Positions 5,410 through 45,845 of a stretch of DNA of 64,000 nucleotides are shown here, piece by piece (positions within the stretch are counted from its first letter, which is position 1; each line of letters opens with the position of its first letter). The DNA is from Raja brachyura (lineage: Eukaryota). The translations under genes and the position numbers were made by a program. Where the stretch lies: assembly GCA_963514005.1 (NCBI GenBank), contig OY740804.1, positions 2,232,001 to 2,296,000 of the forward strand, given 5' to 3'. The notes beneath the pieces were generated by a model that saw only the letters and a list, made by a program, of their open reading frames with translations, ran no database searches and was not told the origin of the DNA.

Positions 5410-8400
5410 CTGTGTCACTCATGTTATGAGATACTTTGTATCTACGCTCACTAGTTTAACACAAAGCTTCTCATCCCTTTCTCCCTCAGTTTTGTGTTAC
5501 ATATTAAGATGAAGTTACCTATGCTGTAATGCTAATAAAGTATTTGGATTTTAATCACTGTGTGTGACCTAAGTTATCCCAACAGCAGAAGCTCGACATG
5601 GTGTCAGAGTGTACGGACTCACTCCTTGCTTAATTATATTGCTTTTATTTTAGTTTGTTGTTTGTTGTTTTCTCCGGTATATATTACTATGGCCTCTGCT
5701 CTCAGAAAACCAGAGATCCCGTGCAACACCACAAAGACCTTGCAGAACGATGGTGTATATTTGAAGAAGATTTCTAAATTTACATTGAAGCGGCTCAACT
5801 TACTGCTGCTCCAGGTGTTCGAGCATCAATTCTTCTTAATCTAGCAGGCACAGAAGCTGCTCGATGTGCCAGAAGATTTTATTATGAACTAGCTAGGTTT
5901 GACCCAGCTAATGTCCAGATCGCTCCCGCTGAGTCTTTCTGTGACCCTGACTGCCTACTACGCAAATTCCGATAGTTATGTGAGTTACGCACTAACCTGG
6001 TCATGGAGAGGCATTTGTTCTTTTCTCGAATCCAGAGACAGGGTGAACCAATGGAGATGTATGTCAGTGCCTTGAAGCACGTTGCCAATCGATGCGATTT
6101 CAGGGATATATGTGATAGACTAGTCCGTGACTGTTTGGTCTATGGTGTCCGCTATGATAAATTATATGATGAGTTACTGCGGGATGCTGAGCTTACCCTA
6201 GAGACTGCTGAAAACCACTGTCGCATCGCTGAATTGGCTGATGCTCATACAAACGTTTTAGGGCACTCTGCTGGTCGTGAAATTAATGTTGCCGTTCTCC
6301 TCAAGTGCCCGACAACTCTATCGTGAGACTAATAGACAATTGTTTTAACTGTAGGGGTTCGCATGCTGCTGCTCGTGACCGTTGCCCTGCGCATGGAAAA
6401 TTATGTTGATTCTGTAACAAAAGGAATAATTTCTTCAAATGCTGCCGCTCGCATAGCAACAGAGTTCAAACAAAGCAATCTGTTAATTCTCTCAACCAAC
6501 TCCCACGGATAATCAGGCTGCTAGCGAAGGTTTTGACTTGGATGTGCATTCCCGTCAGACTCAATACACAAACAACTAGATCCCAAGGTCGCTTTGCTCA
6601 TTAATGGCAAGAACCTTTATCTGAAAGTTGACACAGGGGCCAGATGTAATGTGATCTGTCTAGCTGTGTTGAAAAAGGTACGATAAACAGAGACTGTCAC
6701 TCCTACGGCTACCTCCCTTCTCCCATTTGCAGGAGGTCCAGTGCACCCTATAGGTCAAGTTGAGTTACGCTGCTGTCTTAACTCACGTATCCACAACCTG
6801 AGTTTCCATGTTGTTCGTGAGGATGTGCCGACGTCTCTGCTGGGTGCCAACGTATGTCAAGACATGGGTCTTATCTCTTTCAGCCCTTCTGTTTATCATC
6901 TGACTCCAACCTGTGACTTTAGCCAACAAATCTGACACAAAACAAAACGTTTTTGGATGACAAGCTAGACAGGTTGCATGTTAAGTACACAATTACCATT
7001 AACCCTGAGATCATCCCAGTTGCCGAACAGCACACAAGATTCCCCATGCTATGTGGGACCGCGTTCAAAGTGAACTGAACAGAGTGGTGTTTCTAGGTGT
7101 GATTGTTCCCATCGCTGACCCCTCGGATTGGTTGTGGCAACAAAGAAGAATAAATATGAAATACAGATTTGTGTGAACAAGTGTGGACACTGTGGACAAG
7201 ATTGCAGCGCAGATGGCTGAAGCAACTGTAGATGCCAAGAGTTCATTCTGGCAGATCTCGCTGGAACACAACTCCTCCAAGTTAACCACCTTCAGCACAC
7301 TGTTCAGGCAATACAGATTACTTTGCATGCCTTTTGGCATAAGCTCTGCCAGTGAAGTATTTCAACGAGCTATGGAGCAGTTGTTTGTGGGTTACCCATG
7401 CTCCATTGTAGTGGATGACATCCTTGTTGCTGGACGAACTGTTGAAGAACACAATGCTAATCTGACAAAGGTCTTGGATCGCTCCAAGGCCATTAACCTC
7501 AAGCAAAACCCAGGGTAAGTCAGGTGAAATGCATAGGCCATATGTTCACTAAGGACGGCCTAAAAACGGATCCGGTGAAAACCAGTGCCATCAACGAGCT
7601 CCCAGCACCCACACACGTGCTTGGTCTACAAAGATTCCTTGGCATCGTGAACTACTTGAGAAAATCTTTTCTGAACTTCAGTGAAATATCAGCCCCATTG
7701 CGCTGTGGTCCCTGCTTTGCTGCACAGCAAGTATATTGACGCTGTCCATGTCGGGCACCCAGGCGCTGAAGCCACCATCCTACGGGCAAGAAACATGTTT
7801 TACAGGCCTGGCATGGCTGAATACATCACCGAGAATGTGACCTCCTGTGCAGTGTGTAACAGCTTGGCACCTCATCAACAAAAGCAACCACTTCTTTCAC
7901 ATCCGGCTCCTGCTCTCCCGTGGTCTACAGTGGCAACTGACATATTTGAATGGCATGGCAAGCAGTACCTGGTACTTGTCAATTTGTATTCTGGATGGTT
8001 TGACATTGATTTTCTTAGCAGCCCCACTTCTCGCGGGGTAGTTTCGAAACTAGCTCGCCATTTTGCAGACCACAGAGCTCCGTGCATACTGCTGTCTGAT
8101 AATGGCAGTCAATTTACCAGCCAACACTTCAAGGAGTTTGCTGCATGTTGGGGTTTTCGCAACATCACCAGCAGCCTTGAATATCCACAGTCGAATGGAC
8201 CAGCTGAGTGGGCCGTCAAGAGTACCAAACAGCTCATGGAATGATCGTACAGAGCTAATTCTGACTCCCACTACCCCGTTTTGGGTTCACCAGCTCAACG
8301 TTTATTCTCGAGGCAGACCCGAGCCACGGTGCCTGTGGCGGATCAGGCATTGATCCCACAGGTGGTTCCACCATCGGAGGTCCAGTCCAGGTTACAAAAA

Positions 8401-9168: not shown

Positions 9169-11293
9169 TTCCCTGGAGGACATTTGCTGTGAAGGACGCA
9201 GTGTTCTGGGATAGAAACTGTAGCCGGTAGGGCATTGTGATGATCACCAGGGGCGCCGGGGAGATGGCAGCCCTACCGGCAGTCTGTTCATTTTTTCATC
9301 TTTTTGTTATTTTTTTGTATTTGTTAAAAGTTTGAATAATGTACCTTGGTTTGTTTTATGTGGGGGGAGGGGGGATCGGGGGAAACTTTTTTTCAGGTTG
9401 TTACCTTCCCGGAGATGTGAGCCATAGCTGGAGCTGGAAGCCGCCTCGAACTGTCGTAAGTCCCACCGCGGAGAGCGGACTTAACATCGGAGCGGATCCC
9501 TTACCTGGGATCGCTCCCACCACGGCCTGCGGACTTACCATCATGGATTCGCAGTCTCGGGAGAGGCAAGTCGGGAGCTCCAATGCCACAGAAGGTTCGA
9601 CCAGCCCCGACACGAGATTGGATCGCTCGGCGCGGGGGAGCTGAACGCGTCTACGCGGGTGGCCCAAACACCACCGGCTACAGGATTCAAGATCATCCCG
9701 TCAACGGAGGGCTCGAGGCCCACGACCGAGGGAGAACAAAAGGGAAGGACTTGAACTTTATTTCGCCTTCCATCACAGTGAGGGATGTGTAGGAGTCACT
9801 GTGGTGGATGTTCATTTTAAAATGTGTTTTTGAGTCTGTTGCTTTTAATTGTATGACTGACCTGGCCAGTGAAATTCCTCGCATGTTGCAAAACATATTT
9901 GGCGAATAAAATCTGATTCTGATTCTTCTGATTCTGATAACTGCCTAACTGACAGTGTAGATTTGAAGAAATCCAACTTTTAAATGTAACTTTAAAACAT
10001 TTAAATATCCCCCTCTGCGTCCCTCTCCTTACAACAATATACAAACACTTTCATAGCTTGTGTATTGACAGCAAAGATCCCATTGTTAAGTCATTTTCAG
10101 TTTTTGGAATGTTCACGGCAGCTTATGTAATTAAGATCCCATTGTGATTGGACAACTGTGGGATGCCATTGTGACATCGCTGGAAGAGTCTCCCTCTCAA
10201 AGGCAGTTATTATTCTCAAAGTTGGCTTTTTTTAAACTTTACATATCAATAACTTGTGAAATATAACAACAAATCTGAAGGAAACATTACATTGACGACG
10301 GGAAAAAAACTGAGTAAGAATCTGCAAAATCCCGGAGACAATCATTCCCATCACCCATTCCCCAAACGTAACCCATTCGACCAACGCAATATTCCACCAC
10401 TCACCCAGAGCCCCCAACTGCGCAAGTGCCGCTCATTGCCCCTCATCCCCAACACTTCCTCCCCCTCCCTCTTCTCTCCCCTCACCTCCTCCCCTCCTCC
10501 ACTCCTCTTTCACCACTCCCTCCTGCTCCTTTCCCCTACCCTCAGCCCCTCCCTACCCTCAGTCAGTCCCTCACACCCCCCATAACTCCTCTCCCCTCCC
10601 TACCCTCCTGACCAATTGGGCTTTGTCTCCCAAACTCTACTGCTGCGCCACCGTGACCACCTATTTATTAAATGTTATCTATGGGTATGGTGTTTCCAAG
10701 CCTATTCTGCTGCTGCAGGTAACCATTTAATTGTTGCATTGTCGGTACATACGACAATTAAACAATCTTGACTGTAGACTCTTGACACCTGAGACCATGT
10801 GATTCACCTAACTTCAGCGACAAACATCCTCTCTTGCTCGGTTCTGTTGAAGGATCTTCATTCTGAATCGTTGCCTCTGTTGCTCCACCACAGATGCTGC
10901 CTGACCCACTGTGTGTCTCCCACATTCCCCTTTATTTTTGTTCCTGTTCTCAACATCTGCAGACTCCTGATTTTCCACATGTTGTTCCGTCCCTGTGTGG
11001 TCATGACCACAAATGGACACAGCTCATAGAACCCGGTGATGTTGCCCGTATTGAACAGGACTTGCACAAAGTTCATACCCAACTCAATGCTGGCGTACAA
11101 AGAATCACTCACACCGGCTGTCTTCAGGGCAGGCAGAAGAGAGTTTATTTCCATTAAAGTCCATTTACAGGGTCAGTTCTCCTCACTGCATGCGATCCGA
11201 AGGGCATGTTTCCCTGCTTTAACTCTGAACTAAACTAAACTAAACTAAACTAAACTAAACTTTGCAAGGGCCCTGCTGAATCAGTGGGAGGTT

Positions 11294-11827
11294 TCACTGG
11301 ATTGTCAGCCGGGCCAATTCTTCACATTCCCTATCACGAAAGGTGGTCCAGACACAGGAATATGTCCCCTCATCTTTCTCTTTTACACCTGTCAGGAGCA
11401 ATGAGCCGTCAAATTCAGGAAAGGGATCTCGATGCATGAACTCCCAGCGGACATCATGGCCCTGATATAGGTAAGGTATTCTAGTATGATTCATGGCAAT
11501 TTCAGCACCATCTTTTCTCCATTTAACTACTCTGAGAGATTCGTAATCTTTGGATACTTTACAGGGCAGCGTAATAGAACCACCCAGAGATGCAACGAGC
11601 ACCTTCATGTTAATCGATGATAGGTGATGACTGTATGTATCAGAATCTGTCTCGTTCGTGCATCTTGAAATCTGTTTAACGTTGACTTGCCGAGGAGCCC
11701 GTGCGTTCCACCCGGGCAAGTTTGCTTCCTCTCCCCATTCTCTGGCGATCGGACCTGTTCCAGTTCCGGAGACTTGCCACACCATCTCCACAAGGACCAT
11801 GAATCCTATCCGTCTCTGCAGTCCCAT
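11294..11827 (-). CDS. Putative secreted prepro single Ig V-type domain protein, paralogue 1 (177 aa)
   Basis: Signal-like MGLQRRIGFMVLVEMVWQVSG, pro-region ending RAPR, V-set motifs GGSITLPC, VKWRK, DGSLLLTGVKEKDEGTYSC; no TM; splice acceptor 4 nt before ATG; AATAAA at 11144-11149 (minus). Confidence 0.88.
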   Translation of the reverse strand: MGLQRRIGFMVLVEMVWQVSGTGTGPIAREWGEEANLPGWNARAPRQVNVKQISRCTNETDSDTYSHHLSSINMKVLVASLGGSITLPCKVSKDYESLRVVKWRKDGAEIAMNHTRIPYLYQGHDVRWEFMHRDPFPEFDGSLLLTGVKEKDEGTYSCVWTTFRDRECEELARLTIQ

Positions 11828-12401
11828 GTTCCTGTGGGTGAAACAACCTTATTGCAACTCAGTAGGATTCATGATGACATTCTCTGAACCTCCCCAGAGT
11901 TGGGGAATCGAGAACCAGAGGACATCTGTTTAAGGTGAGGGGGGGAAAGATTTAATGGGAAACTGAGGGGTGACTTTTTTACACAAAGGGTGGAGGGTGT
12001 TTGGAACGAGCTGCCGGAAGATGTAGTTGAGGCAGGTACTATCACAATGATTAAGAAACAGTTAGACAGGTACATTGATAGGGCAGGATTAGAGGGGTAA
12101 GGGCCAAACGCAGGCAGGTGGGTCTAGTTTTGATGGGGCAAGTTGGTGGGCGCGGGCAAGTTGGGCGGAAGGTCTCGCTGTATGACTCTATGACTCACTT
12201 GTCCCACCCCGGTCATTCCTCCTTCTCCCTGGTCCTGTCTAGCAGAAGGTACAGAAGCTTGAAAGCGCGCACCACCAGACTCAGGAACAGCTTCTTCCCC
12301 TCTGCTATCAGGCTTCTGAACTGGGGGAACAGTGAACAGAGACAATCCCACCCCCATCACTCACAGACACTTGAAGGATCCATAGGGTGGCTACCAGCTC
12401 C

Positions 12402-12627
12402 TTTTATACCTACTCCCGGCTTCTCCTGACCTTCATTGCCTGCGCTCCCGTACATTCAACCAATCACTGCCTCCCACGGAGCATTGGCCGGAGTCAGCCG
12501 TGACCTCTCCACCCTCTGCCAACTGTGTCCTTGCATCAGCCGTTAACGTTTAACAAGAACAACGTCATCACAGCTGCCAGCGGCCAACCAGGCGCCCCAC
12601 ACATCCTGCTTGTGTCTCCACCACGTC
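12402..12627 (-). promoter_or_regulatory. Promoter of Ig paralogue 1: TATA box, ERSE, CCACGTC site
   Basis: TATAAAA 12402-12408 (minus); CCAAT-cactgcctc-CCACG 12460-12478; second CCAAT at ~12483; CCACGTC 12621-12627. Unit-2 copy: TATA 41509-41515, ERSE 41567-41585. Confidence 0.7.
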
Positions 12628-12716
12628 TCGCTCTGGCCAACCATCGCAGTTGAGGCAGAAACTATCCCAAGGTTTAAGAAACAGTTAGACAGGAACAGGT
12701 ATAGGTTAGATTTGGG

Positions 12717-12913
12717 GTACACAAAATGCTGGAGAAACTCAGCGGGTGCAGCAGCATCTATGGAGCGAAGGAGATAGGCAACGTTTCGGGCCGAAACCCT
12801 TCTTCAGACTGATCCCACCCCCATGAAGAAGGGTCTCGGCCCGAAACGTTGCCTATCTCCTTCGCTCCATAGATGCTGCTGCACCCGCTGAGTTTCTCCA
12901 GCATTTTGTGTAC
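12717..12913. repeat. 90-bp near-perfect inverted repeat with 17-nt spacer
   Basis: 12717-12806 and 12824-12913 are reverse complements with one mismatch seen. Confidence 0.92.
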
Positions 12914-13160
12914 TCTCGATTTTCCAGCATCTGCAGTTCCTTCTTAAACACATAGGTTATTGGATGAGTATGGACCAAACATGGACAGATGGGACGAGTG
13001 TAGCTGGGACATGTTGGCCAGTGTGGGCAAGTTGGGCTGAAGGGCCTGTTTCCACGCTGTATCACCCTGTGACTATTACACTATGACATTAAATAAATAA
13101 TGTTTATAAAATGAAACTCCACATAAATCTCATCTTCTCCTCTGGTTGTATACACAACAC

Positions 13161-14351
13161 TCATTGACTGCAGCAGATAAAATGAATGTCACACTGGTGG
13201 TACCAGGGCACCTCTGGAAAATGTTCTTCTCAAGATATGATTGAGAAGACTATGTAACATGGAACAGTACAGCACAGGATCAGGCCCTTCGGCCCACAAT
13301 GTGCGTGCTGCATATGATGCCAAGTTAATCTAATCTCCTCTGCCTGCATGTGATCCATAATCTCTGTTCCCCGCATATCCATGAGATGTTTTAGATAAAG
13401 CCTCTATTGTAACTATTGTATCTGCCACCACCACCCACAGCAGCGGGTTCCAGGCACCCACAACCCTCTGTGCCTCGCAGCTGAGGCTACATTTAGATCC
13501 CAATGTTTAAGAAACAGTGAGTCAGGTACATGGATAGGACAGGTTTGGAGGGATATGTGCCAAACTGAATGTTCTCGAGAGAGAGAGTTAGATTTAGCTC
13601 TTAGTGCTAATGCAATCGAGGGATATGGGGAGAAAGCAGGAACGGGGCACTGATTTAGGATGATCAGCCATGATCATTGTTGAATGGCTGTGCTGGCTCG
13701 AAGGGCTGAATGGCCTACTCCTGCACCAATTTTCATTGTTTCTATGTTTCTACACACTCCCAATGAGGGTCGAAACTGGACTCTAATCAGCAGCCCCAAC
13801 AGTGCAAGAGGCCAATGTAAGGGAGGCTCAGTGATGCAGTGGTAGAGCGCTGCCTTACAGCCCTAGAGACCCGGGTTCAATCCTGACTGTGGGTACTGTC
13901 TGTACGGTGGTTGTACGTTTTCCCTATGACCGTGTGGGTGTCCTCCGGGTGCTACAGTTTCCTGACAGATTTCAAAGATGTGCAGGTTTGTAGGTTAATT
14001 GGCTTCAGTAAATTGTCCCTTGCGTGTAGGTTAGAACTTGTGTACAGGCGATCACTCTAAACAAATCTAAACTAAACTCGTCAACTCGACTCAACTCAGC
14101 TAAAGGCAACTCCATGACACTTAATTTTGCTGCTCAGACCTGTTAAAATATTCTGGATTGGAACAAGTAGGGGCAGTTCAGTTTGACCTGGGATGCAAAT
14201 AATAATGGTTCCGACTGTTAATGTTGAGGAGGGATTTCAATGCGCTGATCAAAGGATAAACTCCCTCTTTCCATCTTGTTCCACTAAAGTCATCAACATC
14301 TAGAGACCACAACATGGCTCCTCCACAGTTGTTGGTCATCAGCCACTGAGC
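13161..14351 (-). pseudogene. Relic of a divergent chitinase paralogue (penultimate exon plus decayed CBM14 exon)
   Basis: 14213-14351 follows a good acceptor and reads AQWLMTNNCGGAMLWSLDVDDFSG...YPLISALKSLL; 139 bp like the live exon but followed by GG, not GT. 13161-13232 reads, with frameshifts, RRTF/FQRCPGTT/CDIHFICCSQ*, aligning with [24 protein letters not shown]. Confidence 0.8.
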
Positions 14352-14583
14352 CTGGGGAAAAGGAAGGAAAACCATGACTTGAAAGTGTCTTTTGTTGATG
14401 AGCCTTTTAGGCAATAAAGCACACGGATATAATATGTAAAAAGCAAAATAATTCAATAAATGAGAGAGCACAATACTAGTGTGTAAAGCCAACATCCTTA
14501 GTGCAACCAAAGACAGTCCATAGACATTCATCGTTGACCTCAGTGTCGTGTCGTGTTCTAGTTGTTGGGAAGGAATTATGGAT

Positions 14584-14947
14584 CCAATCACTGCCTCCCA
14601 CGGGGCATTGGCTGGAGCCAGCCGCGACCAATCCCACCGCACAGCCGGCTCAGATTGAGTATAAACTGTGAAACCAGCGCAGGTGCCAGGGCTGTGGTGG
14701 TGACGTGGCGTGGCTGGGACATCCCAGACACAAGCAGGATGTGTGGGGCACCTGGTTGGCCGCAGGCAGCTGTGATGGCGTTGTTCTTGTTAAACGTTAA
14801 CGGCTGATGCAAGGACACGTTTGGCAGAGGGTGGGGAGGTCAATGATGGTCTGGATAAACGGGGAGAAGGTATAAAAGGGGCGAGCGATGGCAGGAGATG
14901 GAAGTAAGACCGGCCTCGTCAGCCTGTGTGGAGACTCCGGAGCTGGT
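14584..14947 (+). promoter_or_regulatory. Promoter and non-coding exon 1 of Ig paralogue 2: distal ERSE, UPRE, TATA, splice donor
   Basis: CCAAT-N9-CCACG 14584-14602; TGACGTGG 14701-14708; TATAAAA 14871-14877; donor ctg|gtaac at 14946; intron ends 15492. Unit-2 copy: ERSE 43590-43608, UPRE 43707-43714, TATA 43909-43915. Confidence 0.72.
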
Positions 14948-15496
14948 AACCACCCCTGTGGATCCTTCAAGTGTCTGTGAGTGATGGGGGTGGGATTGTC
15001 TCTGTTCACTGTTCCCCCAGTTCAGAAGCCTGATAGCAGAGGGGAAGAAGCTGTTCCTGAGTCTGGTGGTGCGTGCTTTCAAGCTTCTGTACCTTCTGCT
15101 AGACAGGACCAGGGAGAAGGAGGAATGACCGGGGTGGGACATGTCTTTGATTTTTTTGGTTGTAGATGGAGTGACTGGTGGGGAGTGTGGTCCGTGTGAT
15201 GGACTGGGCTCCATCCACAACTCTCTGCAATTTCTTGTGGTCTTGGGCTTAGAGCTGTTCCCAAACCAAGCTGTGATGCAACCCGACAGTCTGCTTTCCG
15301 TGGTGCATCTGTAGACGTTTGTAAGAGACATTGGAGACTTGCCGTATTTCCTTGGTCTCCAAGGAGGTAGATGCATTGGTGTGTCTCCTTGGCTGCCACT
15401 TCACATTGCCCAGTGTGGTGGCAGCAACTTCAGAGAATATCATCATGAATCCCACTGAGTTGCAATAAGGTGACCCATTGTTTTACCCACAGGAAC

Positions 15497-15997
15497 ATGG
15501 GACTGCAGAGATGGATAGGATTCATGGTCCTTGTGGAGATGGTGTGGCAAGTCTCCGGAACTGGAACAGGTCCGATCTCCAGAGAATGGGGAGAGGAAGC
15601 AAACTTTCCCGGGTGGAACGCACGGGTTCCTCGGCAAGTTAACAAACAAGAAACTCCAGAATGCGGTGTTAAGGCAGATTTGACCAAGATGATGAAGATG
15701 ACGGCACGCAAGGGTAGTTCTGCTACGCTACCCTGTGAAATACCCACAGGGAAGGATGGACCCACGCATTTTGTGGTCACCTGGAGGAAAGGGAAGGTGA
15801 CACTGGGCGTGTTTACTAAAGGGAAAGGTCCAATCTATCCAGGGGGACCCGACCGCTGGAGGTTCGTGGATCCAAACATGGTTGATGCCTCGTTGATCGT
15901 CACGGATGTAAGCGAGACTGATGCTGGGATGTATTCCTGTGCTTGGTTCACTTGCCAAGGGGAATGTAGACTAAATGTCAAGCTGGCAGTGAAGTGA
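15497..15997 (+). CDS. Putative secreted prepro single Ig V-type domain protein, paralogue 2 (166 aa)
   Basis: ATG at 15497 after acceptor ttttacccacag|gaac; same leader, RVPR, GSSATLPC, VTWRK, DASLIVTDVSETDAGMYSC; AATAAA 16429-16434 followed by a GT-rich element. Confidence 0.9.
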   Translation: MGLQRWIGFMVLVEMVWQVSGTGTGPISREWGEEANFPGWNARVPRQVNKQETPECGVKADLTKMMKMTARKGSSATLPCEIPTGKDGPTHFVVTWRKGKVTLGVFTKGKGPIYPGGPDRWRFVDPNMVDASLIVTDVSETDAGMYSCAWFTCQGECRLNVKLAVK

Positions 15998-17095
15998 AAC
16001 CTCCCACTGATTCAGCACAGACCCCTCCAAGTGTCAGGAGCAACAGGCAGTGGCAGGTCAGCACAAACACAATAACATCCTTCATTATAAACTTGACACA
16101 CATAGGCCAACAACAGCATTATATATTGTAGTCACTGAATTCATCATGAGGGGAATAGAGGGGTGGACACTAAGCATCTTTTACCTGGGGTACGGGAATC
16201 AAGAACCAAGGGACATACATTTAAGGTGAGAGGGGCAAGATTTAATATTAACCTGAGGGGCAATATTTTCACTCATGGGGTGGTGGGTTTATGGAACTGT
16301 CCGGTGGGGCGGGAACTGTAACAATATTTAATACACACTTGCTACAGGGAAAGGTTTAGGGGGATATGGGGTGAACACAGTGCAATGGGACAGACCCTGC
16401 TTGCACCGGTAAATGTACCATTAATGGAAATAAACTCTCTTGAAGACAGCCGGTGGTGTGAGTGATTCTTTGTGCGCCAGCATTGAAGTTGGGTGTGAAC
16501 TTTGTGCAACTCTTGCTCACTACGGGCAGCATCGCCGGGTTCTATGAGCTGTGTCCATTATTGGTCATGACCACACAGGGACGGAACAACATGTGGAAAA
16601 TCAGGAGACTGCAGATGTTGCGAACAGGGACAAAAGTAAAGGGGAATGTTTTTCAGGAACAAAACAGGAACAAAAGTAAAGGCAGATGACACAACAGTAG
16701 GCGGGTTTGCAGATAGTGGAGATGGTTGTGAAAAATTGCAGCAGGATCTTGAAATATTGGCCAGGTGGGCTGAGGAACGGTTGATGGAATTTAATACAGA
16801 GTAATGTGAGGTGCTGTATTTGGGGGTGTCCAACATGTGCAGGACCTACACAGTGAATGGCCCGGCTCTGGGGAGTGTTGTAGAGCAGAGGTTTGGAGGG
16901 GTATGGACCAAACACAGGCAGGAGAGACTATTGCAGCTGGGACATGTTGACCAGTGTGGGCAAGTTGGGCTGAAGGGCCTGTTTCCACGCTGTATCACTC
17001 TGTGACTACTACACTATGACATTAAATAAATAATGATTATAAAATGAAACTCCACATAAATCTCACCTTCTCCTCTGGCTGTATACACAGCACAC

Positions 17096-17167
17096 TCATT
17101 GACTGCAGCAGATACAATGAATGTCACACTGGTGGTACCAGGGCACCTCTGGAAAATGTTCTTCTCA
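17096..17167 (-). pseudogene. Second decayed CBM14 exon relic
   Basis: Direct repeat of the 13161 segment; reads FQRCPGTT/CDIHCICCSQ*. Unit-2 copy at ~46921-46992. Confidence 0.6.
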
Positions 17168-17500
17168 AGATGTGATTGAGAAGACGGTGTAACATAGAAC
17201 ATGGAACAGTACAGCACAGGAACAGGCCCTTCGGCCCACAATGTCCGTGATGAACATGATCACCATGGAAAATTGGTTCTGACTGTCTACCCTATCTGTA
17301 TCTCATACTTTTATAACTTGTGCAAGAGGCCAATGCAAGGGAGGCACAATGGCGCAGAGCTAGTGTTGCTGCCTTCCAGCGCTATGTGTGGGGCGCCTGG
17401 TTGGCCGCTGGCAGCTGGGATGACGTTGTTCTTGTTAAACGTTAACGGCTGATGCAAGGACACGTTTGGCAGAGGGTGGAGAGGTCACGGCTGACTCTGG

Positions 17501-17656
17501 CCAATGCTCCGTGGGAGGCAGTGATTGGTTGAAAGTACGTGAGCGCAGGCAATGAGGGTCAGGAGAAGCCGGGAGTAGGTATAAAAGGGGCGAGCGATGG
17601 CAGGAGATGTGAACAAGACCGGCCTCGTCACCCTGTGTGGAGACTCCGGAGCTGGT
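17501..17656 (+). promoter_or_regulatory. Promoter and non-coding exon 1 of Ig paralogue 3: CCAAT, reverse ERSE, TATA, splice donor
   Basis: CCAAT 17501-17505; CGTGG-N9-ATTGG 17510-17528; TATAAAA 17580-17586; donor at 17655; acceptor ends 18173. Confidence 0.72.
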
Positions 17657-18177
17657 AACCACCCCTGTGGATCCTTCAAGTGTCTGTGAGTGATGGGAGT
17701 GGGATTGTCTCTGTTCACTGTTCCCCCAGTTCAGAAGCCTGATAGCAGAGGGGAAGAAGCTTTCCTTGAGCCTGGTGTTGCTCGAATGACAGATGTGGGA
17801 CAAGTGATGGAGTCATACAGCGAGACCTTCGACCCAACTTGCCCGCGCCCACCAACTTGCCCCATCAAAACTAGACCCACCTGCCTGCTTTTGGCCCTTA
17901 CCCTTCTAATCCTGCCCTATCAATGTACCTGTCGAACTGTTTTTTAATCATTGTGATAGTACCTGCCTCAACTACCTCTTCCGGCAGCTCGTTCCAAACA
18001 ACCTCCACCCTTTGTGTATAAAAGTCACCCCTCAGTTTCCCATTAAATCTTTCCCCCCCTCACCTTAAACCGATGTCCTCGGGTTCTCGATTCCCCAACT
18101 CTGGGCGGGTTCAGAGAATGTCATCATGAATCCTACTGAGTTGCAATAATGTGACCCATTGTTTTACCCACAGGAAC

Positions 18178-18849
18178 ATGGGACTGCAGAGATGGATAGG
18201 ATTCATGGTCCTTGTGGAGATGGTGTGGCAAGTCTCTGGAATTGCAACAGGTCCGATCTCCAGAGAATGGGGAGAGGAGGCAAACTTGCCCGGGTGGAAC
18301 GCACCTGCTCCTCGGCAAGTCAATGAAGATCCAAATCCACAATGCAGTGTTAACCTCGCTCCGGACAAGATGAGATGGACGGAGGTGACGGCCAGTAAGG
18401 GTGGTTCTGCTCAGCTATCCTGCAAAATGCCCAAAGAAGATGGTGCAGCCGATAAAGTTGTGGTGCTGTGGACGAAAGGAAAAGACACGATCGCCGTGTT
18501 TACTGACAGGAAGGGTGCGCAATATCCAGGGTCAACCGGACGCTGGAAGTTCATGAATGCAAACGTGGTTGACACACGGGACGCCTCGTTGGTCCTGGCG
18601 AGGCTGGAAAAGGATGATGCTGGGAAATATTCCTGCGCTTGGCTAGTTAATAACGTGCCTTGTAAACAAAACACCAAAACCCCCCCCCTCTCTGCCCACA
18701 CTCCCAACCTGTGCAAGTCCTCCTGTAGCGACTCCACCTATTTTTGTATCCCTTCAATACCGTTGGCACTCATCTTCCTTAGCAGCCTCACGTGCGGCAC
18801 TTTATCAAAGGCTTCAGAAGGGGACTTCCGAACCAGGGTCACAGTTTAA
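18178..18849 (+). CDS. Ig V-type paralogue 3, C-terminus replaced by antisense CR1 sequence (possible pseudogene)
   Basis: Same leader (PAPR), GGSAQLSC, VLWTK, DASLVLARLEKDDAGKYSC; homology ends at PCKQNTK (18678), then reverse-strand CR1 RT sequence (SLQEDLHRLGVWAER); the family's post-stop motif is missing. Confidence 0.78.
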   Translation: MGLQRWIGFMVLVEMVWQVSGIATGPISREWGEEANLPGWNAPAPRQVNEDPNPQCSVNLAPDKMRWTEVTASKGGSAQLSCKMPKEDGAADKVVVLWTKGKDTIAVFTDRKGAQYPGSTGRWKFMNANVVDTRDASLVLARLEKDDAGKYSCAWLVNNVPCKQNTKTPPLSAHTPNLCKSSCSDSTYFCIPSIPLALIFLSSLTCGTLSKASEGDFRTRVTV

Positions 18850-38309: not shown

Positions 38310-40378
38310 TTCCCTGGAGGACATTTGCTGTGAAGGACTCAGTGTTCTGGGATAGAAACTGTAGCCGGTAGGGCATTGTGATGATCACCAGGGGCGCCGG
38401 GGAGATGGCAGCCCTGCCTGCAGTCTGTTCATTTTTTCATCTTTTTGTTATTTTTTTGTATTTGTTAAAAGTTTGAATAATGTACCTTGGTTTGTTTTAT
38501 GTGGGGGGAGGGGGGATCGGGGGAAACTTTTTTTCAGGTTGTTACCTTCCTGGAGATGTGAGCCATAGCTGGAGCTGGAAGCCGCCTCGAACTGTCGTAA
38601 GTCCCACCGCGGAGAGCGGACTTAACATCGGAGCGGATCCCTTACCTGGGATCGCTCCCACCGCGGCCTGCGGACTTACCATCATGGATTCGCAGTCTCG
38701 GGAGAGGCAAGTCGGGAGCTCCAATGCCACAGAAGGTTCGACCAGCCCCGACACGAGATTGGATCGCTCGGCGCGGGGGAGCTGAACGCGTCTACGCGGG
38801 TGGCCCAAACGCCACCGGCTACAGGATTCAAGATCATCCCGTCAACGGAGGGCTCGAGGCCCACGACCGAGGGAGAACAAAAGGGAAGGACTTGAACTTT
38901 ATTTCGCCTTCCATCACAGTGAGGGATGTGTAGCAGTCACTGTGGTGGATGTTCATTTTAAAATGTGTTTTTAAGTCTGTTGCTTTTAATTGTATGACTG
39001 ACCTGGCCAGTGAAATTCCTCGCATGTTGCAAAACATATTTGGCGAATAAAATCTGATTCTGATTCTTCTGATTCTGATAACTGCCTAACTGACAGTGTA
39101 GATTTGAAGAAATCCAACTTTTAAATGTAACTTTAAAACATTTAAATATCCCCCTCTGCGTCCCTCTCCTTACAACAATATACAAACACTTTCATAGCTT
39201 GTGTATTGACAGCAGAGATCCCATTGTTAAGTCATTTTCAGTTTTTGGAATGTTCACGGCAGCTTATGTAATTAAGATCCCATTGTGATTGGACAACTGT
39301 GGGATGCCATTGTGACATCGCTGGAAGAGTCTCCCTCTCAAAGGCAGTTATTATTCTCAAAATAAGAATCTGCAAAATCTGCAAAATCTTCTAATCTTCT
39401 AAGAATCTGCAAAATCCCGGAGACAATCATTCCCATCACCCATTCCCCAAACGTAACCCATTCGACCAACGCAATATTCCACCACTCACCCATAGCCCCC
39501 AACTGCGCAAGTGCGGCTCATTGCCCCTCATCCCCAACACTTCCTGCCCCTCCCTCTTCTCTCCCCTCACCTCCTCCCCTCCTCCACTCCTCTTTCACCG
39601 CTCCCTCCTGCTCCTTTCCCCTACCCTCAGCCCCTCCCTACCCTCAGTCAGTCCCTCACACCCCCCATAACTCCTCTCCCCTCCCTACCCTCCTGACCCA
39701 TTGGGCTTTGTCTCCCAAACTCTACTGCTGCGCCACCGTGACCACCTATTTATTAAATGTTATCTATGGGTATGGTGTTTCCAAGCCTATTCTGCTGCTG
39801 CAGGTAACCATTTAATTGTTCCATTGCCGGTACATACGACAATTAAACAATCTTGACTGTAGACTCTTGACACCTGAGACCATGTGATTCACCTAACTTC
39901 ACTGACAAACTTCCTCTCTTGCTCGGTTCTGTTGAAGGATTTTCATTCTGAATTGTTGCCTCTGTTGCTCCACCACAGATGCTGCCTGACCCACTGTGTG
40001 TCTCCCACATTCCCCTTTATTTTTGTTCCTGTTCTCAACATCTGCAGACTCCTGATTTTCCACATGTTCTTCCGTCCCTGTATGGTCATGACCAATAATG
40101 GACACAGCTCATAGAACACGGTGATGTTGCCCGTAGTGAGCAGGAGTTGCACAAAGTTCACACCCAACTCAAAGCTGGCGCACAAAGAATCACTCACACC
40201 GGCCTTCTTCAGGGCAGGCAGAAGAGAGTTTATTTCCATTAAAGTCCATTTACAGGGTCAGTTCTCCTCACTGCATGCGATCCGAAGGGCATGTTTCCCT
40301 GCTTTAACTCTGAACTAAACTAAACTAAACTAAACTAAACTAAACTTTGCAAGGGCCCTGCTGAATCAGTGGGAGGTT

Positions 40379-40912
40379 TCACTGGATTGTCAGCCGGGCC
40401 AATTCTTCACATTCCCTATCACGAAAGGTGGTCCAGACACAGGAATATGTCCCCTCATCTTTCTCTTTTACACCTGTCAGGAGCAATGAGCCGTCAAATT
40501 CAGGAAAGGGATCTCGATGCATGAACTCCCAGCGGACATCATGGCCCTGATATAGGTAAGGTATTCTAGTATGATTCATGGCAATTTCAGCACCATCTTT
40601 TCTCCATTTAACTACTCTGAGAGATTCGTAATCTTTGGATACTTTACAGGGCAGCGTAATAGAACCACCCAGAGATGCAACGAGCACCTTCATGTTAATC
40701 GATGATAGGTGATGACTGTATGTATCAGAATCTGTCTCGTTCGTGCATCTTGAAATCTGTTTAACGTTGACTTGCCGAGGAGCCCGTGCGTTCCACCCGG
40801 GCAAGTTTGCTTCCTCTCCCCATTCTCTGGCGATCGGACCTGTTCCAGTTCCGGAGACTTGCCACACCATCTCCACAAGGACCATGAATCCTATCCGTCT
40901 CTGCAGTCCCAT
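40379..40912 (-). CDS. Ig V-type paralogue 1, unit-2 copy (177 aa)
   Basis: Translation identical to 11294-11827; AATAAA 40229-40234 (minus). Confidence 0.88.
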   Translation of the reverse strand: MGLQRRIGFMVLVEMVWQVSGTGTGPIAREWGEEANLPGWNARAPRQVNVKQISRCTNETDSDTYSHHLSSINMKVLVASLGGSITLPCKVSKDYESLRVVKWRKDGAEIAMNHTRIPYLYQGHDVRWEFMHRDPFPEFDGSLLLTGVKEKDEGTYSCVWTTFRDRECEELARLTIQ

Positions 40913-42165
40913 GTTCCTGTGGGTTAAACAACCTTATTGCAACTCAGTAGGATTCATGATGACATTCTCTGAACCCGCCCAGAGTTGGGGAATCGAGAAC
41001 CAGAGGACATCTGTTTAAGGTGAGGGGGGGAAAGATTTAATGGGAAACTGAGGGGTGACTGTTTTACACAAAGGGTGGAGGGTGTTTGGAACGAGCTGCC
41101 GGAAGATGTAGTTGAGGCAGGTACTATCACAATGATTAAGAAACAGTTAGACAGGTACATTGATAGGGCAGGATTAGAGGGGTAAGGGCCAAACGCAGGC
41201 AGGTGGGTCTAGTTTTGATGGGGCAAGTTGGTGGGCGCGGGCAAGTTGGTGGGCGCGGGCAAGTTGGGCCGAAGGTCTCGCTGTATGACTCTATGACTCC
41301 ATCACTTGTCCCACCCCGGTCATTCCTCCTTCTCCCTGGTCCTGTCTAGCAGAAGGTACAGAAGCTTGAAAGCGCGCACCACCAGACTCAGGAACAGCTT
41401 CTTCCCCTCTGTTATCAGGCTTCTGAACTGGGGGAACAGTGAACAGAGACAATCCCACCCCCATCACTCACAGACACTTGAAGGATCCACAGGGTGGCTA
41501 CCAGCTCCTTTTATACCTACTGCCGGCTTCTCCTGACCTTCATTGCCTGCGCTCCCGTACATTCAACCAATCACTGCCTCCCACGGAGCATTGGCGGGAG
41601 CCAGCCGCGACCTCTCCACCCTCTGCCAACTGTGTCCTTGCATCAGCCGTTAACGTTTAACAAGACCAACGTCATCCCAGCTGCCAGCGGCCAACCAGGC
41701 GCCCCACACATCCTGCTTGTGTCTCCACCACGTCTCGCTCTGGCCAACCATCGCAGTTGAGGCAGAAACTATCCCAAGGTTTAAGAAACAGTTAGACAGG
41801 AACAGGTATAGGTTAGATTTGGGGTACACGAAGAAGGGTCTCGGCCCGAAACGTTGCCTATCTCCTTCGCTCCATAGATGCTGCTGCACCCGCTGAGTTT
41901 CTCCAGCATTTTGTGTACTCTCGATTTTCCAGCATCTGCAGTTCCTTCTTAAACACATAGGTTATTGGATGAGTATGGACCAAACATGGACAGATGGGAC
42001 TAGTGTAGCTGGGACATGTTGGCCAGTGTGGGCAAGTTGGGCTGAAGGGCCTGTTTCCACACTGTATCACCCTGTGACTATTACACTATGACATTAAATA
42101 AATAATGTTTATAAAATGAAACTCCACATAAATCTCATCTTCTCCTCTGGTTGTATACACAACAC

Positions 42166-43357: not shown

Positions 43358-44604
43358 CTGGGGAAAAGGAAGGAAAACCATGACTTGAAAGTGTCTTTTG
43401 TTGATGAGCCTTTTAGGCAATAAAGCACACGGATATAATATGTAAAAAGCAAAATAATTCAATAAATGAGAGAGCACAATACTAGTGTGTAAAGCCAACA
43501 TCCTTAGTGCAACCAAAGACAGTCCATAGACATTCATCGTTGACCTCATTGTCGTGTCGTGTTCTAGTTGTTGGGAAGGAATTATGGATCCAATCACTGC
43601 CTCCCACGGGGCATTGGCTGGAGCCAGCCGCGACCAATCCCAACGCACCGCCGGCTCAGATTGAGTATAAACTGTGAAACCAGCGCAGGTGCCAGGGCTG
43701 TGGTGGTGACGTGGCGTGGCTGGGACATCCAGTCCGAATGTTGGCCGGAGCGAGACGTGGTGGAGACACAAGCAGGATGTGTGGGGCGCCTGGTTGGCCG
43801 CTGGCAGCTGGGATGGCGTTGTTCTTGTTAAACGTTAACGGCTGATGCAAGGACACGTTTGGCAGAGGGTGGAGAGGTCAATGAGGGTCTGGAGACACCG
43901 GGAGAAGGTATAAAAGGGGCGAGCAATGGCAGGAGATGGAAGTAAGACCGGCCTCGTCAGCCTGTGTGGAGACTCCGGAGCTGGTAACCACCCCCTGTGG
44001 ATCCTTCAAGTGTCTGTGAGTGATGGGGGTGGGATTGTCTCTGTTCTCTGTTCCCCAGTTCAGAAGCCTGATAGCAGAGGGGAAGAAGCTGTTCCTGAGT
44101 CTGGTGGTGCGTGCTTTCAAGCTTCTGTACCTTCTGCTAGACAGGACCAGGGAGAAGGAGGAATGACCGGGGTGGGACAAGTCTTTGATTTTTTTGGTTG
44201 TAGATGGAGTCGCTGGTGGGGAGTGTGGTCCGTGTGATGGACTGGGCTCCATCCACAACTCTGCAATTTCTTGTGGTCTTGGGCTCAGAGCTGTTCCCAA
44301 ACCAAACTGTGATGCAACCTGACAGTCTGCTCTCCGTGGTGCATCTGTAGAAGCTTGTGAGAGACATTAGAGACTTGCCGTATTTCCTTGGTCTCCAAGG
44401 AGGTAGATGCATTGGTGTGTCTCCTTGGCTGCCACTTTAATGTTGTTGGTCAACGACAGGTCAAAGCAACTTAAAATAAACCAGGCAGGAGCTGAAGAGG
44501 CTGCACAGCGACATTGCCCAGTGTGGTGGCAGCAGCTTCAGAGAATGTCATCATGAATCCTACTGAGTTGCAATAATGTGACCCATTGTTTCACCCACAG
44601 GAGC

Positions 44605-45114
44605 ATGGGACTGCAGAGATGGATAGGATTCATAGTCCTTGTGGAGATGGTGTGGCAAGTCTCTGGAACTGGAACAGGTCCGATCTCCAGAGAATGGGGA
44701 GAGGAAGCAAACTTGCCCGGGTGGAACGCACGGGTTCCTCGGCAAGTCAACAAACAAGAAACTCCAGAATGCGGTGTTAAGCCAGATTTGACCAAGATGA
44801 CGGAGATGACGGCACGCAAGGGTGGTTCTGCTACGCTACCCTGTGAAGTACCCACAGGGAAGGATGGACCCACGCATTTTGTGGTCACCTGGAGGAAAGG
44901 GAAGGGGACACTGGGCGTGTTTACTAAAGGGAAAGGTCCAATCTATCCAGGGGGTGCCGGCCGCTGGAAGTTCATGAAACCAAACGTGGCTGAGACACGG
45001 GATGCCTCGTTGATCGTCACGGGTTTACGCGAGACTGATGCTGGGATGTATTCCTGTGCTTGGTTCACTAGCCAAGGGGAATGTAGACTAAATGTCAAGC
45101 TGGCAGTGAAGTGA
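44605..45114 (+). CDS. Ig V-type paralogue 2, unit-2 copy (169 aa)
   Basis: ATG 44605 after acceptor; leader, RVPR, V-set motifs; AATAAA 45546-45551. Confidence 0.9.
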   Translation: MGLQRWIGFIVLVEMVWQVSGTGTGPISREWGEEANLPGWNARVPRQVNKQETPECGVKPDLTKMTEMTARKGGSATLPCEVPTGKDGPTHFVVTWRKGKGTLGVFTKGKGPIYPGGAGRWKFMKPNVAETRDASLIVTGLRETDAGMYSCAWFTSQGECRLNVKLAVK

Positions 45115-45845
45115 AACCTCCCACTGATTCAGCACAGACCCCTCCAAGTGTCAGGAGCAACAGGCAGTGGCAGGTCAGCACAAACACAATAACATCCTTC
45201 ATTATAAACTTGACACACTTAGGCCAACAACAGCATTATATATTGTAGTCACTGAATTCATCATGAGGGGAATAGAGGGGTGGACACTAAGCATCTTTTA
45301 CCTGGGGTACGGGAATCAAGAACCAAGGGACATACATTTAAGGTGAGAGGGGCAAGATTTAATAGGAACCTGAGGGGCAATATTTTCACTCATGGGGTGG
45401 TGGGTTTATGGAACTGTCCGGTGGGGCGGGAACAATAACAATATTTAATACACACTTGGTACAGGGAAAGGTTTAGGGGGATATGGGGTGAACGCAGTGC
45501 AATGGGACAGACCCTGCTTGCACGGGTAAATGTACCATTAATGGAAATAAACTCTGTTGAAGACAGCCGGTGGTGTGAGTGATTCTTTGTACGCCAGCAT
45601 TGAAGTTGGGTGTGAACTTTGTTCAACTCTTGCTCACTACGGGCAGCATCGCCGGGTTCTATGAGCTGTGTCCATTATTGGTCATGACCACACGGGGACG
45701 GAACAACATGTGGAAAATCAGGAGTCTGCAGATGTTGCGAACAGGGACAAAAGTAAAGGGGAATGTTTTTCAGGAACAAAACAGGAACAAAAGTAAAGGC
45801 AGATGACACAACAGTAGGCGGGTTTGCAGATAGTGGAGTTGGTTG

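What the first reader, a model, noticed from the sequence alone, without database searches (positions are those of the whole stretch)
11294..18849. Candidate undescribed family of secreted prepro single-Ig-V-domain proteins
Seen: five ORFs (11294-11827, 15497-15997, 18178-18849, 40379-40912, 44605-45114) have a ~21-aa signal-like segment (ending VSG), a 25-aa acidic Trp-containing spacer ending RAPR/RVPR (PAPR in paralogue 3), one Ig V-type domain (B-strand Cys, C-strand Trp, D-x-G-x-Y-x-C) and a stop right after strand G (paralogue 3 excepted). There is no TM or C domain, and I saw no RSS or J motif. The whole CDS is one exon, with a TATA promoter, a non-coding exon 1 and an AATAAA. Established: Ig/TCR V segments and most IgSF receptors split leader and V by an intron and lack a propeptide; RxxR is the minimal furin site. 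Inference: a germline-encoded, proteolytically matured soluble ~13-15 kDa binder family that I cannot assign to a known gene.
Basis: partly seen in the sequence, partly recalled or inferred. Interest (0 to 1): 0.92.

Follow-up and report, generated by a model that had tools for sequence, protein, structure and literature searches.

The report
Secreted single nectin-like Ig domain genes
A skate genome carries a tandemly copied, so far uncharacterised family of small genes that each encode a signal peptide, a short conserved spacer and one nectin/poliovirus-receptor-type immunoglobulin V domain, most likely made as soluble binding proteins, though whether they are expressed is untested.

Summary
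Five ORFs at the stated coordinates share a near-identical 49-residue N-terminus (signal-like segment, then a 25-residue spacer ending RAPR, RVPR or PAPR) followed by one V-set Ig domain. Four of the five stop right after strand G. No TM segment, C domain, RSS or J motif is present.

- **Gene structure.** Each is a two-exon gene with a TATA box and a short 5' exon; the whole CDS is in exon 2. Four copies keep a conserved AATAAA module. The donor is at 14976/14977, not 14945.
- **Paralogue 3.** It is 3'-truncated, lacks the P4 Arg and is missing from the second repeat unit, so it is probably decaying.
- **Assignment.** The V domain can be assigned to the nectin/PVR lineage. Relatives were found only in batoids: Leucoraja and Rhinoraja ("uncharacterized") and Narcine ("nectin-1-like").
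- **Evolution.** The 5' module evolves in concert (dS 0.03-0.17), while the V domain is old and fast-evolving (dS 0.5-1.2).
- **Context.** The genes lie between tandem chitinase genes in a 29-31 kb repeat, and each has a perfect ERSE nearby.

The scan also noted this family just beyond this window (s1-881296).

Verdict: a real, uncharacterised, batoid-restricted variant of a known kind. Interest is moderate.

The parts
11125..12478 (-). Paralogue 1, an intact gene. ERSE 12460-12478, TATAAAA 12408-12402, donor after 12365, acceptor AG 11833-11832, exon 2 from 11831, CDS 11827-11294 (177 aa), AATAAA 11149-11144.
   Evidence: A 61-nt deletion after the TATA box removes the upstream ATG seen in paralogues 2, 3 and 5.
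14584..16455 (+). Paralogue 2, an intact gene. Distal ERSE 14584-14602, TATAAAAG 14872-14879, upstream in-frame ATG 14888, exon 1 ends at 14976, intron 14977-15492 (mostly a high-copy repeat), exon 2 from 15493, CDS 15497-15997 (166 aa), AATAAA 16429-16434.
   Evidence: AF2 model: residues 1-50 disordered, Ig domain 51-166 confident.
17510..18849 (+). Paralogue 3, probably decaying. ERSE 17510-17528, TATA about 17580-17586, exon 1 ATG at 17597, exon 2 from 18174, CDS 18178-18849 (223 aa). The cleavage motif is PAPR. Strand G is cut after ..CKQNTK, and the conserved stop/3'UTR box and AATAAA module are missing. The copy is absent from repeat unit 2.
40210..41585 (-). Paralogue 4, the unit-2 copy of paralogue 1. 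CDS 40912-40379 is 100% identical in nucleotides to paralogue 1. ERSE 41567-41585, AATAAA 40234-40229.
43590..45575 (+). Paralogue 5, the unit-2 copy of paralogue 2. ERSE 43590-43608. The exon 1 ATG at 43926 is put out of frame by a 1-nt insertion. CDS 44605-45114 (169 aa), AATAAA 45546-45551.

Best explanation
These are members of a batoid-restricted, tandemly amplified family of two-exon genes. Each encodes a small soluble protein with three parts. The first is a cleavable signal peptide (MGLQRWIGFMVLVEMVWQVSG). The second is a 25-residue disordered spacer that usually ends R-x-P-R. The third is a single V-set Ig domain of the nectin/poliovirus-receptor type, with one extra Cys pair that may tie the N-terminal segment to the start of strand G (not checked in the model).

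The protein would enter the ER, lose its signal, and possibly lose the spacer to a proprotein convertase or another Arg-specific protease, leaving an N-terminal Gln. It would then be released as a 13-15 kDa binder. It would act through the CDR-equivalent loops and the CC'C''FG face, where the family varies most. The most economical reading is a soluble ligand or decoy for nectin/PVR-type partners, or for microbes or viruses that use such domains.

The promoter, exon 1, intron ends and leader are kept alike within a species by gene conversion. The V domains are old lineages that diverge fast.

Shown here: gene anatomy, fold, family assignment, taxonomic range in current databases and evolutionary pattern.
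Inferred: secretion, cleavage and binding role.
Untested: expression.
For: **Anatomy.** Five copies share an invariant TATA box, donor, acceptor and leader. Four share a stop codon with a 22-nt box and an AATAAA module.

**Signal.**
- There is a basic n-region, a 12-residue hydrophobic core (Kyte-Doolittle 2.06) and V-S-G at positions -3 to -1.
- The Narcine relative has the same architecture built from different residues (MDLRRWTGLLVLAGTVWEITA), as expected of a signal peptide.

**No membrane anchor** in the intact copies.

**Fold.** In the AF2 model residues 1-50 have pLDDT below 50, and the Ig domain scores 66-91 in blocks of ten residues. The top Foldseek hits are CAR D1, JAML, nectin-1 D1, PVR D1 and TIGIT.

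**Lineage.**
- The family profile's best single-domain PDB match is PVR D1 (42.6 bits).
- The Narcine member hits only PVR and nectin-1, -2 and -3 among 177,635 distinct PDB sequences.
- Among the 150 best hits from 1.84 billion representatives, the best per-domain match outside the family is a shark 'nectin-2-like' protein (31% identity, E 1e-11).

**Not the exon of a larger gene.** Leucoraja, Rhinoraja and Narcine gene models all end at or within a few to about 16 residues of the same point.

**Likely functional.**
- Paralogues 1 and 4 differ at 0 of 534 nt, against 1-2% in most flanking 200-nt bins.
- The core Ig residues are invariant across 11 sequences.
- Variability peaks in the BC, C'C'' and FG loops.

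**Concerted 5' module.**
- Leader dS is 0.03-0.17, against 0.5-1.2 for the V domain.
- Residue 21 is Gly in all window copies and Ala in all six Leucoraja copies.

**Old V lineages.** Three V lineages are shared with Leucoraja.

**Cleavage motif.** R-x-P-R is a known convertase-type site. ProBNP is processed by furin and corin after Pro75-Arg76 (PMC5996066). That the proBNP motif is RAPR is my own knowledge.
Against: - There is no expression evidence for this species. Only DNA runs hold the sequence.
- No signal-peptide or cleavage predictor was available. The h-region contains a Glu.
- The P4 Arg is absent in Narcine (IDPR), in paralogue 3 (PAPR) and in Leucoraja P0006, so furin cleavage is not a family-wide feature.
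- Spacer conservation within skates can be explained by gene conversion alone, so it is not evidence of function.
- Leucoraja Gnomon models start 31 residues upstream. If that start were used, the hydrophobic core would be internal.
- The PVR-family lock (AX6G) and key (T(Y/F)P) motifs are only partly kept in the window copies.
- The homodimer prediction gave no verdict.
Confidence: 0.65

Rival explanations
1. The same secreted single-V protein, but the 25-residue spacer is not a propeptide. It stays on as a flexible N-terminal tail, and R-x-P-R is incidental or is used by a different Arg-specific protease.
For: The only residues shared with Narcine at the junction are PRQV, with no P4 Arg. 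P0006 and paralogue 3 lack the motif. The conservation of the spacer is explained by concerted evolution.
Against: R-x-P-R is kept in 9 of 11 skate sequences. In Narcine the spacer differs in length and sequence but still ends at the same PR|QV junction, which is the usual pattern for a pro-region.
Confidence: 0.3
2. The ORFs are silent relics, such as decaying duplicates or retrocopies, carried along with the amplified chitinase unit and making no product.
For: - There is no RNA evidence.
- Paralogue 3 is truncated and was lost from unit 2.
- Paralogue 2 has derived changes at conserved positions: G74S, loss of the ETR before DASL, and a new unpaired Cys.
- Paralogues 1 and 4 have a 61-nt promoter-proximal deletion that leaves only about 15 nt of exon 1.
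Against: - Four of five ORFs are intact.
- The architecture is kept from skates to an electric ray.
- The paralogue 1 and 4 CDS are identical while their flanks differ.
- Splice sites, TATA box, ERSE and poly(A) module are all conserved.
- NCBI models exist in three species.
Confidence: 0.1
3. Translation starts at the upstream ATG of exon 1, as in the Leucoraja models (MAGD...). The hydrophobic stretch is then internal, and the product is not a classical secreted protein.
For: Six Leucoraja Gnomon models include a 31-residue extension. The extension is in frame in paralogues 2 and 3 and sits in a good Kozak context.
Against: - The ATG is deleted in paralogues 1 and 4 and frameshifted in paralogue 5.
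- It lies only 9 nt after the TATA box, so it is probably upstream of the transcription start.
- The Rhinoraja model starts at MGLQRW, and the Narcine extension is unrelated in sequence.
Confidence: 0.05
4. The V exon belongs to a larger membrane receptor gene of the nectin, NITR or MDIR kind, whose other exons lie elsewhere.
For: V-set domains of this lineage normally sit in V-C-C-TM proteins. The conserved GTGAAAC at the stop could in principle act as a donor.
Against: - There is an in-frame stop at the same place in four copies and in three other species.
- A conserved AATAAA lies 145-430 nt downstream.
- The would-be donor is weak and in phase 2, whereas Ig exons are phase 1 (own knowledge).
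- No C2 or TM exon is present in the window. The only other genes are chitinases and transposable elements.
Confidence: 0.04

Closest known systems
Nectin / poliovirus receptor (PVR, CD155) family, domain D1, with TIGIT, CD226 and PVRIG
   Same: The V domain is homologous at 28-31% identity, with the shared stretch RDASL..L..ED.G.Y.C. The Narcine member keeps both the AX6G lock and the T-Y-P key. Paralogue 3 keeps AX6G, and paralogue 1 keeps T-F-x. The motif definitions come from PMC10486284.
   Different: - Single domain only, with no C2 domains, TM segment or tail.
- Leader and V domain lie in one exon.
- A conserved spacer sits before the domain.
- There is an extra Cys pair.
- The lock and key motifs are mostly degraded in the window copies.
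- The (V/I)(S/T)Q motif is absent.
Soluble PVR (sCD155) isoforms
   Same: A soluble protein carrying a PVR-type V domain that can compete for the partners of the membrane form (own knowledge).
   Different: sCD155 arises by alternative splicing of a V-C-C gene and keeps all three Ig domains. Here, dedicated genes encode the V domain alone.
Teleost SITR (soluble immune-type receptor)
   Same: A germline-encoded multigene family of secreted IgSF proteins without a TM segment (PMC3031540).
   Different: SITR has two Ig domains, and its V domain is CD300-like. There is no sequence relationship to the skate family.
VCBPs of amphioxus and Ciona
   Same: Secreted V-type Ig proteins linked to chitin biology. 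Here the V genes are interleaved with chitinase genes that carry CBM14 domains.
   Different: VCBPs join two V domains and a chitin-binding domain in one polypeptide. Here they are separate genes, and no physical or functional link has been shown.
Conotoxin, amphibian AMP and cathelicidin precursors (layout only)
   Same: A very conserved prepro region is followed, at a sharp boundary, by a rapidly diverging mature domain.
   Different: Here the conservation extends to synonymous sites, the promoter and the intron ends, and shows species-specific fixed differences. That points to gene conversion. The mature part is a 120-130 residue Ig domain, not a peptide.

Membership tests
Pfam V-set (PF07686) | Score above the gathering cut-off | tested here: met
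   All five copies score 32.1-38.5 bits against a cut-off of 26.
Nectin/PVR family | N-terminal V domain homologous to PVR or nectin D1 | tested here: met
   PVR D1 is the best single-domain PDB match. The Narcine member hits only PVR and nectins. A shark nectin-2-like protein is the best match outside the family.
Nectin/PVR family | V-C2-C2 ectodomain, TM segment and cytoplasmic tail | tested here: not met
   A stop follows strand G. There is no TM segment and no C2 exon in the window.
Nectin/PVR family | AX6G lock and T(Y/F)P key motifs (PMC10486284) | tested here: inconclusive
   AX6G is present in paralogue 3, P0002, P0003 and P0051. Paralogues 2 and 5 have G in place of A. T-Y-P occurs only in P0051, and T-F/Y-x in paralogue 1 and P0005 (P0007 has V-Y-R).
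Ig/TCR V gene segments | RSS heptamer abutting the V domain, no strand G in the germline, and a leader intron | tested here: not met
   No CACAGTG lies within about 380 nt of a V end. Strand G is encoded. Leader and V domain are contiguous.
NITR, MDIR, CD300, pIgR and TREM type innate receptors | TM segment or signalling tail; a J-like FGxG motif (NITR) or an extra C-C' disulfide (CD300/pIgR) | tested here: not met
   There is no TM segment and no FGxG. The extra Cys pair lies before strand A and at the start of strand G, not in C/C'. None of these families is among the top sequence or fold matches.
VCBP | Two V domains plus a chitin-binding domain in one protein | tested here: not met
   There is one V domain. 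CBM14 is an exon of the neighbouring chitinase gene on its own transcript.
Proprotein-convertase substrates | R-x-x-R at the pro/mature junction, and cleavage there | tested here: inconclusive
   The motif is present in paralogues 1, 2, 4 and 5 and in most Leucoraja copies. It is absent in paralogue 3, P0006 and Narcine. Cleavage cannot be tested with these tools.
Classical secretory proteins | Cleavable N-terminal signal peptide | tested here: inconclusive
   The n/h/c regions and the -3/-1 rule fit, and the architecture is conserved in Narcine with different residues. No dedicated predictor was available, and there is a Glu in the h-region.

The most novel reading that the evidence does not exclude
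The family is a lineage-specific humoral effector system of skates and rays. Its members would be proteolytically matured, soluble nectin/PVR-type V domains that diversify under selection, co-amplified with chitinases and wired to ER-stress elements.

They would act as decoys for viruses or microbes that use nectin-type receptors, or as VCBP-like mucosal binders.

The two subfamilies may pair as soluble heterodimers. Paralogue 1-type copies keep the aromatic 'key', and paralogue 2/3-type copies keep the AX6G 'lock'. Paralogues 1 and 2 are arranged head-to-head.
Probability: 0.15. Interest if true: 0.8.

Novelty: new variant of a known kind. Interest (0 to 1): 0.52.

Why it matters
Cartilaginous fishes are the oldest living lineage with Ig-based immunity, and their non-rearranging IgSF repertoire is poorly charted.

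A dedicated, amplified family of secreted single nectin/PVR-type V domains would be a new kind of soluble IgSF effector or decoy. Its putative orthologues are only 56-84% identical between skate genera.

The family is also a clear example of a gene-conversion tract that stops at a domain boundary.

Practically, it shows that the 'uncharacterized' and 'nectin-1-like' models in three batoid genomes form one family. It also suggests that the 31-residue N-terminal extension in the Leucoraja models is an annotation artefact.

Tried and rejected
- **RNA evidence.** The look-up of sequencing runs returned only runs of unrecorded type. When laid on the window they behaved as genomic DNA: continuous across the intron, with huge depth on the intronic repeat. 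Expression, splice junction, transcription start and poly(A) site could therefore not be tested.
- **Genomic context of relatives.** The Leucoraja and Narcine loci, their nucleotide sequences and cross-species dN/dS could not be examined.
- **Homodimer prediction.** The job for the paralogue 1 V domain gave no verdict. It is no evidence either way.
- **ESM Atlas.** It gave only generic V-set neighbours.
- **Second homologue search.** A search with the Narcine protein found only itself.
- **Literature.** Searches on skate secreted IgSF proteins, nectins in cartilaginous fish and the Leucoraja LOC identifiers found no description of the family.
- **Rejected: the Ig exons are part of the chitinase gene.** The complete chitinase gene has its own full exon set at 24.8-33.9 kb. 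The chitinase-like exon next to paralogues 1 and 2 is an orphan relic.
- **Rejected: exon 1 derives from a transposable element.** Read depth shows that the high-copy repeat starts only at about 14996-15020, inside the intron.

Full report
**1. Observation**

A 29-nt leader probe finds exactly these five sites, and tblastn with all family proteins finds no further copies or fragments in the window. All five pass Pfam's gathering score for V-set.

Residues 1-49 are almost invariant. After that the sequences fall to 31-50% identity, while keeping the B-strand Cys, the C-strand Trp, D-x-G-x-Y-x-C, and an extra invariant Cys pair before strand A and at the start of strand G.

The window is a tandem array of 29-31 kb units (1-28513, 28514-59727, and 59728 onward) that are 97-98% identical. 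Paralogue 4 is therefore the unit-2 copy of paralogue 1, and paralogue 5 is the unit-2 copy of paralogue 2. Paralogue 3 has no unit-2 copy: 17342-18783 is replaced there by a 3.2 kb LINE-bearing insert at 47167-50367.

**2. Gene anatomy**

An alignment of the five upstream regions shows the following:
- an invariant TATAAAA;
- a short exon 1 ending in an invariant ..GTGTCT|GTGAGT donor;
- an intron whose first ~150 nt and last ~65 nt are conserved, while its middle is a very high-copy repeat (read depth jumps about 1000-fold from about 14996);
- an invariant acceptor ..CCCACAG|GAAC, four bases before the ATG.

Joining 14976 to 15493 gives ..SFKCLN-MGLQRW. This is exactly the junction in six Leucoraja erinacea Gnomon models, so the donor is 14976/14977, not 14945.

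Those Leucoraja models start at an upstream ATG (MAGD...). In the window that ATG behaves as follows:
- it is in frame in paralogues 2 and 3;
- it is shifted by a 1-nt insertion in paralogue 5;
- it is removed by a 61-nt deletion in paralogues 1 and 4;
- it lies only 9 nt after the TATA box.

The Rhinoraja model starts at MGLQRW, and the Narcine model's extension is unrelated in sequence. This is an inference.

At the 3' end, paralogues 1, 2, 4 and 5 share the stop codon embedded in a 22-nt box (GTGAAACCTCCCACTGATTCAGCA). They also share an ATGGAAATAAACTCT poly(A) module 145 nt (paralogues 1 and 4) or 430 nt (paralogues 2 and 5) downstream.

Paralogue 3 diverges after ..CKQNTK, and has these further defects:
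- it loses the end of strand G, the conserved box and the poly(A) module;
- it reads on for 57 codons, including a hydrophobic 19-mer (Kyte-Doolittle 1.81);
- its cleavage motif is PAPR instead of RAPR.

It is probably decaying.

**3. The protein**

The N-terminus has a basic n-region, a 12-residue hydrophobic core and V-S-G at positions -3 to -1. The electric-ray relative has the same layout built from different residues (MDLRRWTGLLVLAGTVWEITA). That is how signal peptides evolve.

The 25-residue spacer has two Trp, three Glu and three Arg, so it is net neutral and not acidic in skates. AlphaFold2 predicts residues 1-50 as disordered and residues 51-166 as a confident Ig sandwich.

No TM-grade hydrophobic stretch follows the signal in the intact copies. 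The products from Gln47 would be 13.1-15.2 kDa. No RSS heptamer abuts a V end, and there is no FGxG motif.

R-x-P-R precedes Gln47 in four of five window copies and in most Leucoraja copies. It is missing from paralogue 3 and P0006, and Narcine has ..IDPR|QV. A Pro-Arg junction is processed by furin and corin in proBNP (PMC5996066; the exact RAPR motif is my own knowledge). Cleavage is plausible but unproven, and it is not a family-wide feature.

**4. Family assignment**

- The family profile's best single-domain match among solved structures is PVR/CD155 D1, followed by CD226 and nectin-2 (each one matched stretch); JAML (best overall, two weaker stretches) and MXRA8 rank alongside them on whole-sequence score.
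- Foldseek on the model gives CAR D1, JAML, nectin-1 D1, PVR D1 and TIGIT.
- A profile search of 1.84 billion representatives listed, among its best 150, only one other small full-length relative. This is a 218-residue Narcine bancroftii protein that NCBI calls 'nectin-1-like'.
- That Narcine protein, searched alone, hits only PVR and nectin-1, -2 and -3 in the PDB.
- Re-scoring the 150 best hits per domain puts a sevengill-shark 'nectin-2-like' protein next, at 44 bits. Narcine scores 95 bits and the skate members 284 bits or more. Pairwise identity to the shark protein is 31%.
- The PVR-family lock (AX6G) and key (T(Y/F)P) motifs (PMC10486284) are both present in Narcine. In skates AX6G survives in paralogue 3, P0002 and P0003. 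A T-F/Y-x remnant survives in paralogue 1 and P0005 (P0007 has V-Y-R).

The V domain therefore belongs to the nectin/PVR lineage. The protein is not a nectin, because it has no C2 domains, TM segment or tail.

Direct homologues were found only in Leucoraja erinacea (six loci), Rhinoraja longicauda and Narcine. All are batoids. The window's own proteins are not in the database.

**5. Evolution**

Between paralogues, synonymous divergence is 0.03-0.17 in codons 1-49 and 0.5-1.2 in the V domain. The promoter and intron ends are conserved as well. Residue 21 is Gly in every window copy and Ala in every Leucoraja copy. Together these are the signature of concerted evolution of the 5' module, with a tract boundary at the start of the mature domain.

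The V domains form three lineages shared with Leucoraja. Putative orthologues are 84%, 64-73% and 56% identical, which indicates fast protein evolution. Variability peaks in the BC, C'C'' and FG loops and in the N-terminal segment. V-domain dN/dS between paralogues is 0.7-1.1.

Since the recent unit duplication:
- Paralogues 1 and 4 have stayed identical over 534 nt, while most flanking 200-nt bins differ by 1-2%.
- Paralogues 2 and 5 differ by 18 replacement changes and 1 silent change in the V domain, plus a 3-codon indel (binomial p = 0.045).
- Nearly all of those changes are derived in paralogue 2, and some hit conserved positions. This may be positive selection, conversion from an unseen donor, or the start of decay.

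**6. Context**

Each unit carries a complete AMCase-like chitinase gene on the minus strand, with its catalytic motifs and a CBM14 exon; one copy spans 24.8-33.9 kb. An orphan chitinase exon relic sits between paralogues 1 and 2. The Ig genes are intergenic, and paralogues 1 and 2 are head-to-head.

A perfect ERSE (CCAAT-N9-CCACG) occurs five times in the window, once beside each Ig gene, against 0.12 expected by chance. It is proximal in paralogues 1, 3 and 4, and about 290 nt upstream in paralogues 2 and 5. Earlier notes of this scan say the family continues beyond the window's end.

**7. Mechanism and rivals**

The best reading is a secreted, possibly pro-processed, soluble nectin/PVR-type V domain that acts as a binder or decoy through its variable loops and CC'C''FG face. 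I give this 0.65 for the secreted single-domain protein. The specific binding role is much less certain.

The rivals are:
- an uncleaved spacer (0.3, a variant of the main reading);
- a silent relic (0.1);
- an upstream translation start (0.05);
- an exon of a larger receptor gene (0.04).

**8. What could not be done**

- No RNA run was on record, and the four runs laid on the window were genomic.
- The homodimer prediction returned no verdict.
- No paper describing the family was found.

**9. Verdict**

This is a real multigene family, uncharacterised in the literature searched, and so far found only in batoids. It is a new variant of a known kind: a nectin/PVR-type V domain turned into a stand-alone secreted protein with an unusual one-exon prepro-V layout and a concertedly evolving 5' module.

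Interest is moderate (0.52). It would rise sharply if expression, processing and a binding partner were shown.

Noticed in passing
window 24846-33807 (-); further copies at 1595-4727 and 59237-63020: A complete AMCase-like GH18 chitinase gene sits in each repeat unit. Exons carry [51 protein letters not shown] and a CBM14 chitin-binding exon at 24846-25181. The Ig genes lie between these tandem chitinase genes.
   Followed up: partly
window 14178-14375 (-) and 43184-43380 (-): An orphan chitinase exon relic (..GGAMLWSLDVDDFSG..) matches AMCase residues 345-396 (E 2.5e-12). It sits between head-to-head Ig paralogues 1 and 2, with no other chitinase exons beside it.
   Followed up: yes
window 12460-12478, 14584-14602, 17510-17528, 41567-41585, 43590-43608: There are five perfect ER-stress elements (the identical 19-mer CCAATCACTGCCTCCCACG), one beside each Ig gene, against 0.12 expected by chance. 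Paralogues 2 and 5 lost the proximal copy in a 64-nt deletion and have a second copy about 290 nt upstream, next to a TGACGTGG (UPRE-like) site.
   Followed up: partly
window 47136-50156: A LINE (endonuclease plus reverse transcriptase ORFs) is present only in unit 2. There it replaces the 1.4 kb that holds Ig paralogue 3 in unit 1.
   Followed up: partly
window 18661-18849: The read-through tail of paralogue 3 includes a hydrophobic 19-mer (FCIPSIPLALIFLSSLTCG, Kyte-Doolittle 1.81) followed by a short charged end. This looks like an accidental TM-like tail created by a 3' rearrangement.
   Followed up: no
window 15715-15914 against 44830-45030: The V domains of paralogues 2 and 5 differ at 7.5% of sites, against about 1.5% in the flanks. 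There are 18 replacement changes to 1 silent change, almost all derived in paralogue 2. They include G74S, loss of ETR before DASL, and a new fifth Cys.
   Followed up: yes
window 7681-8244 and 36822-37385: A retroelement integrase ORF (Integrase_H2C2 plus rve) occurs in both repeat units.
   Followed up: no
window 15535-15632 against 15682-16170: In whole-genome runs of three organisms, summed contig depth over the leader is about 5-10 times that over the paralogue 2 V domain. This fits many more family copies sharing the leader, but the depth measure is crude.
   Followed up: no
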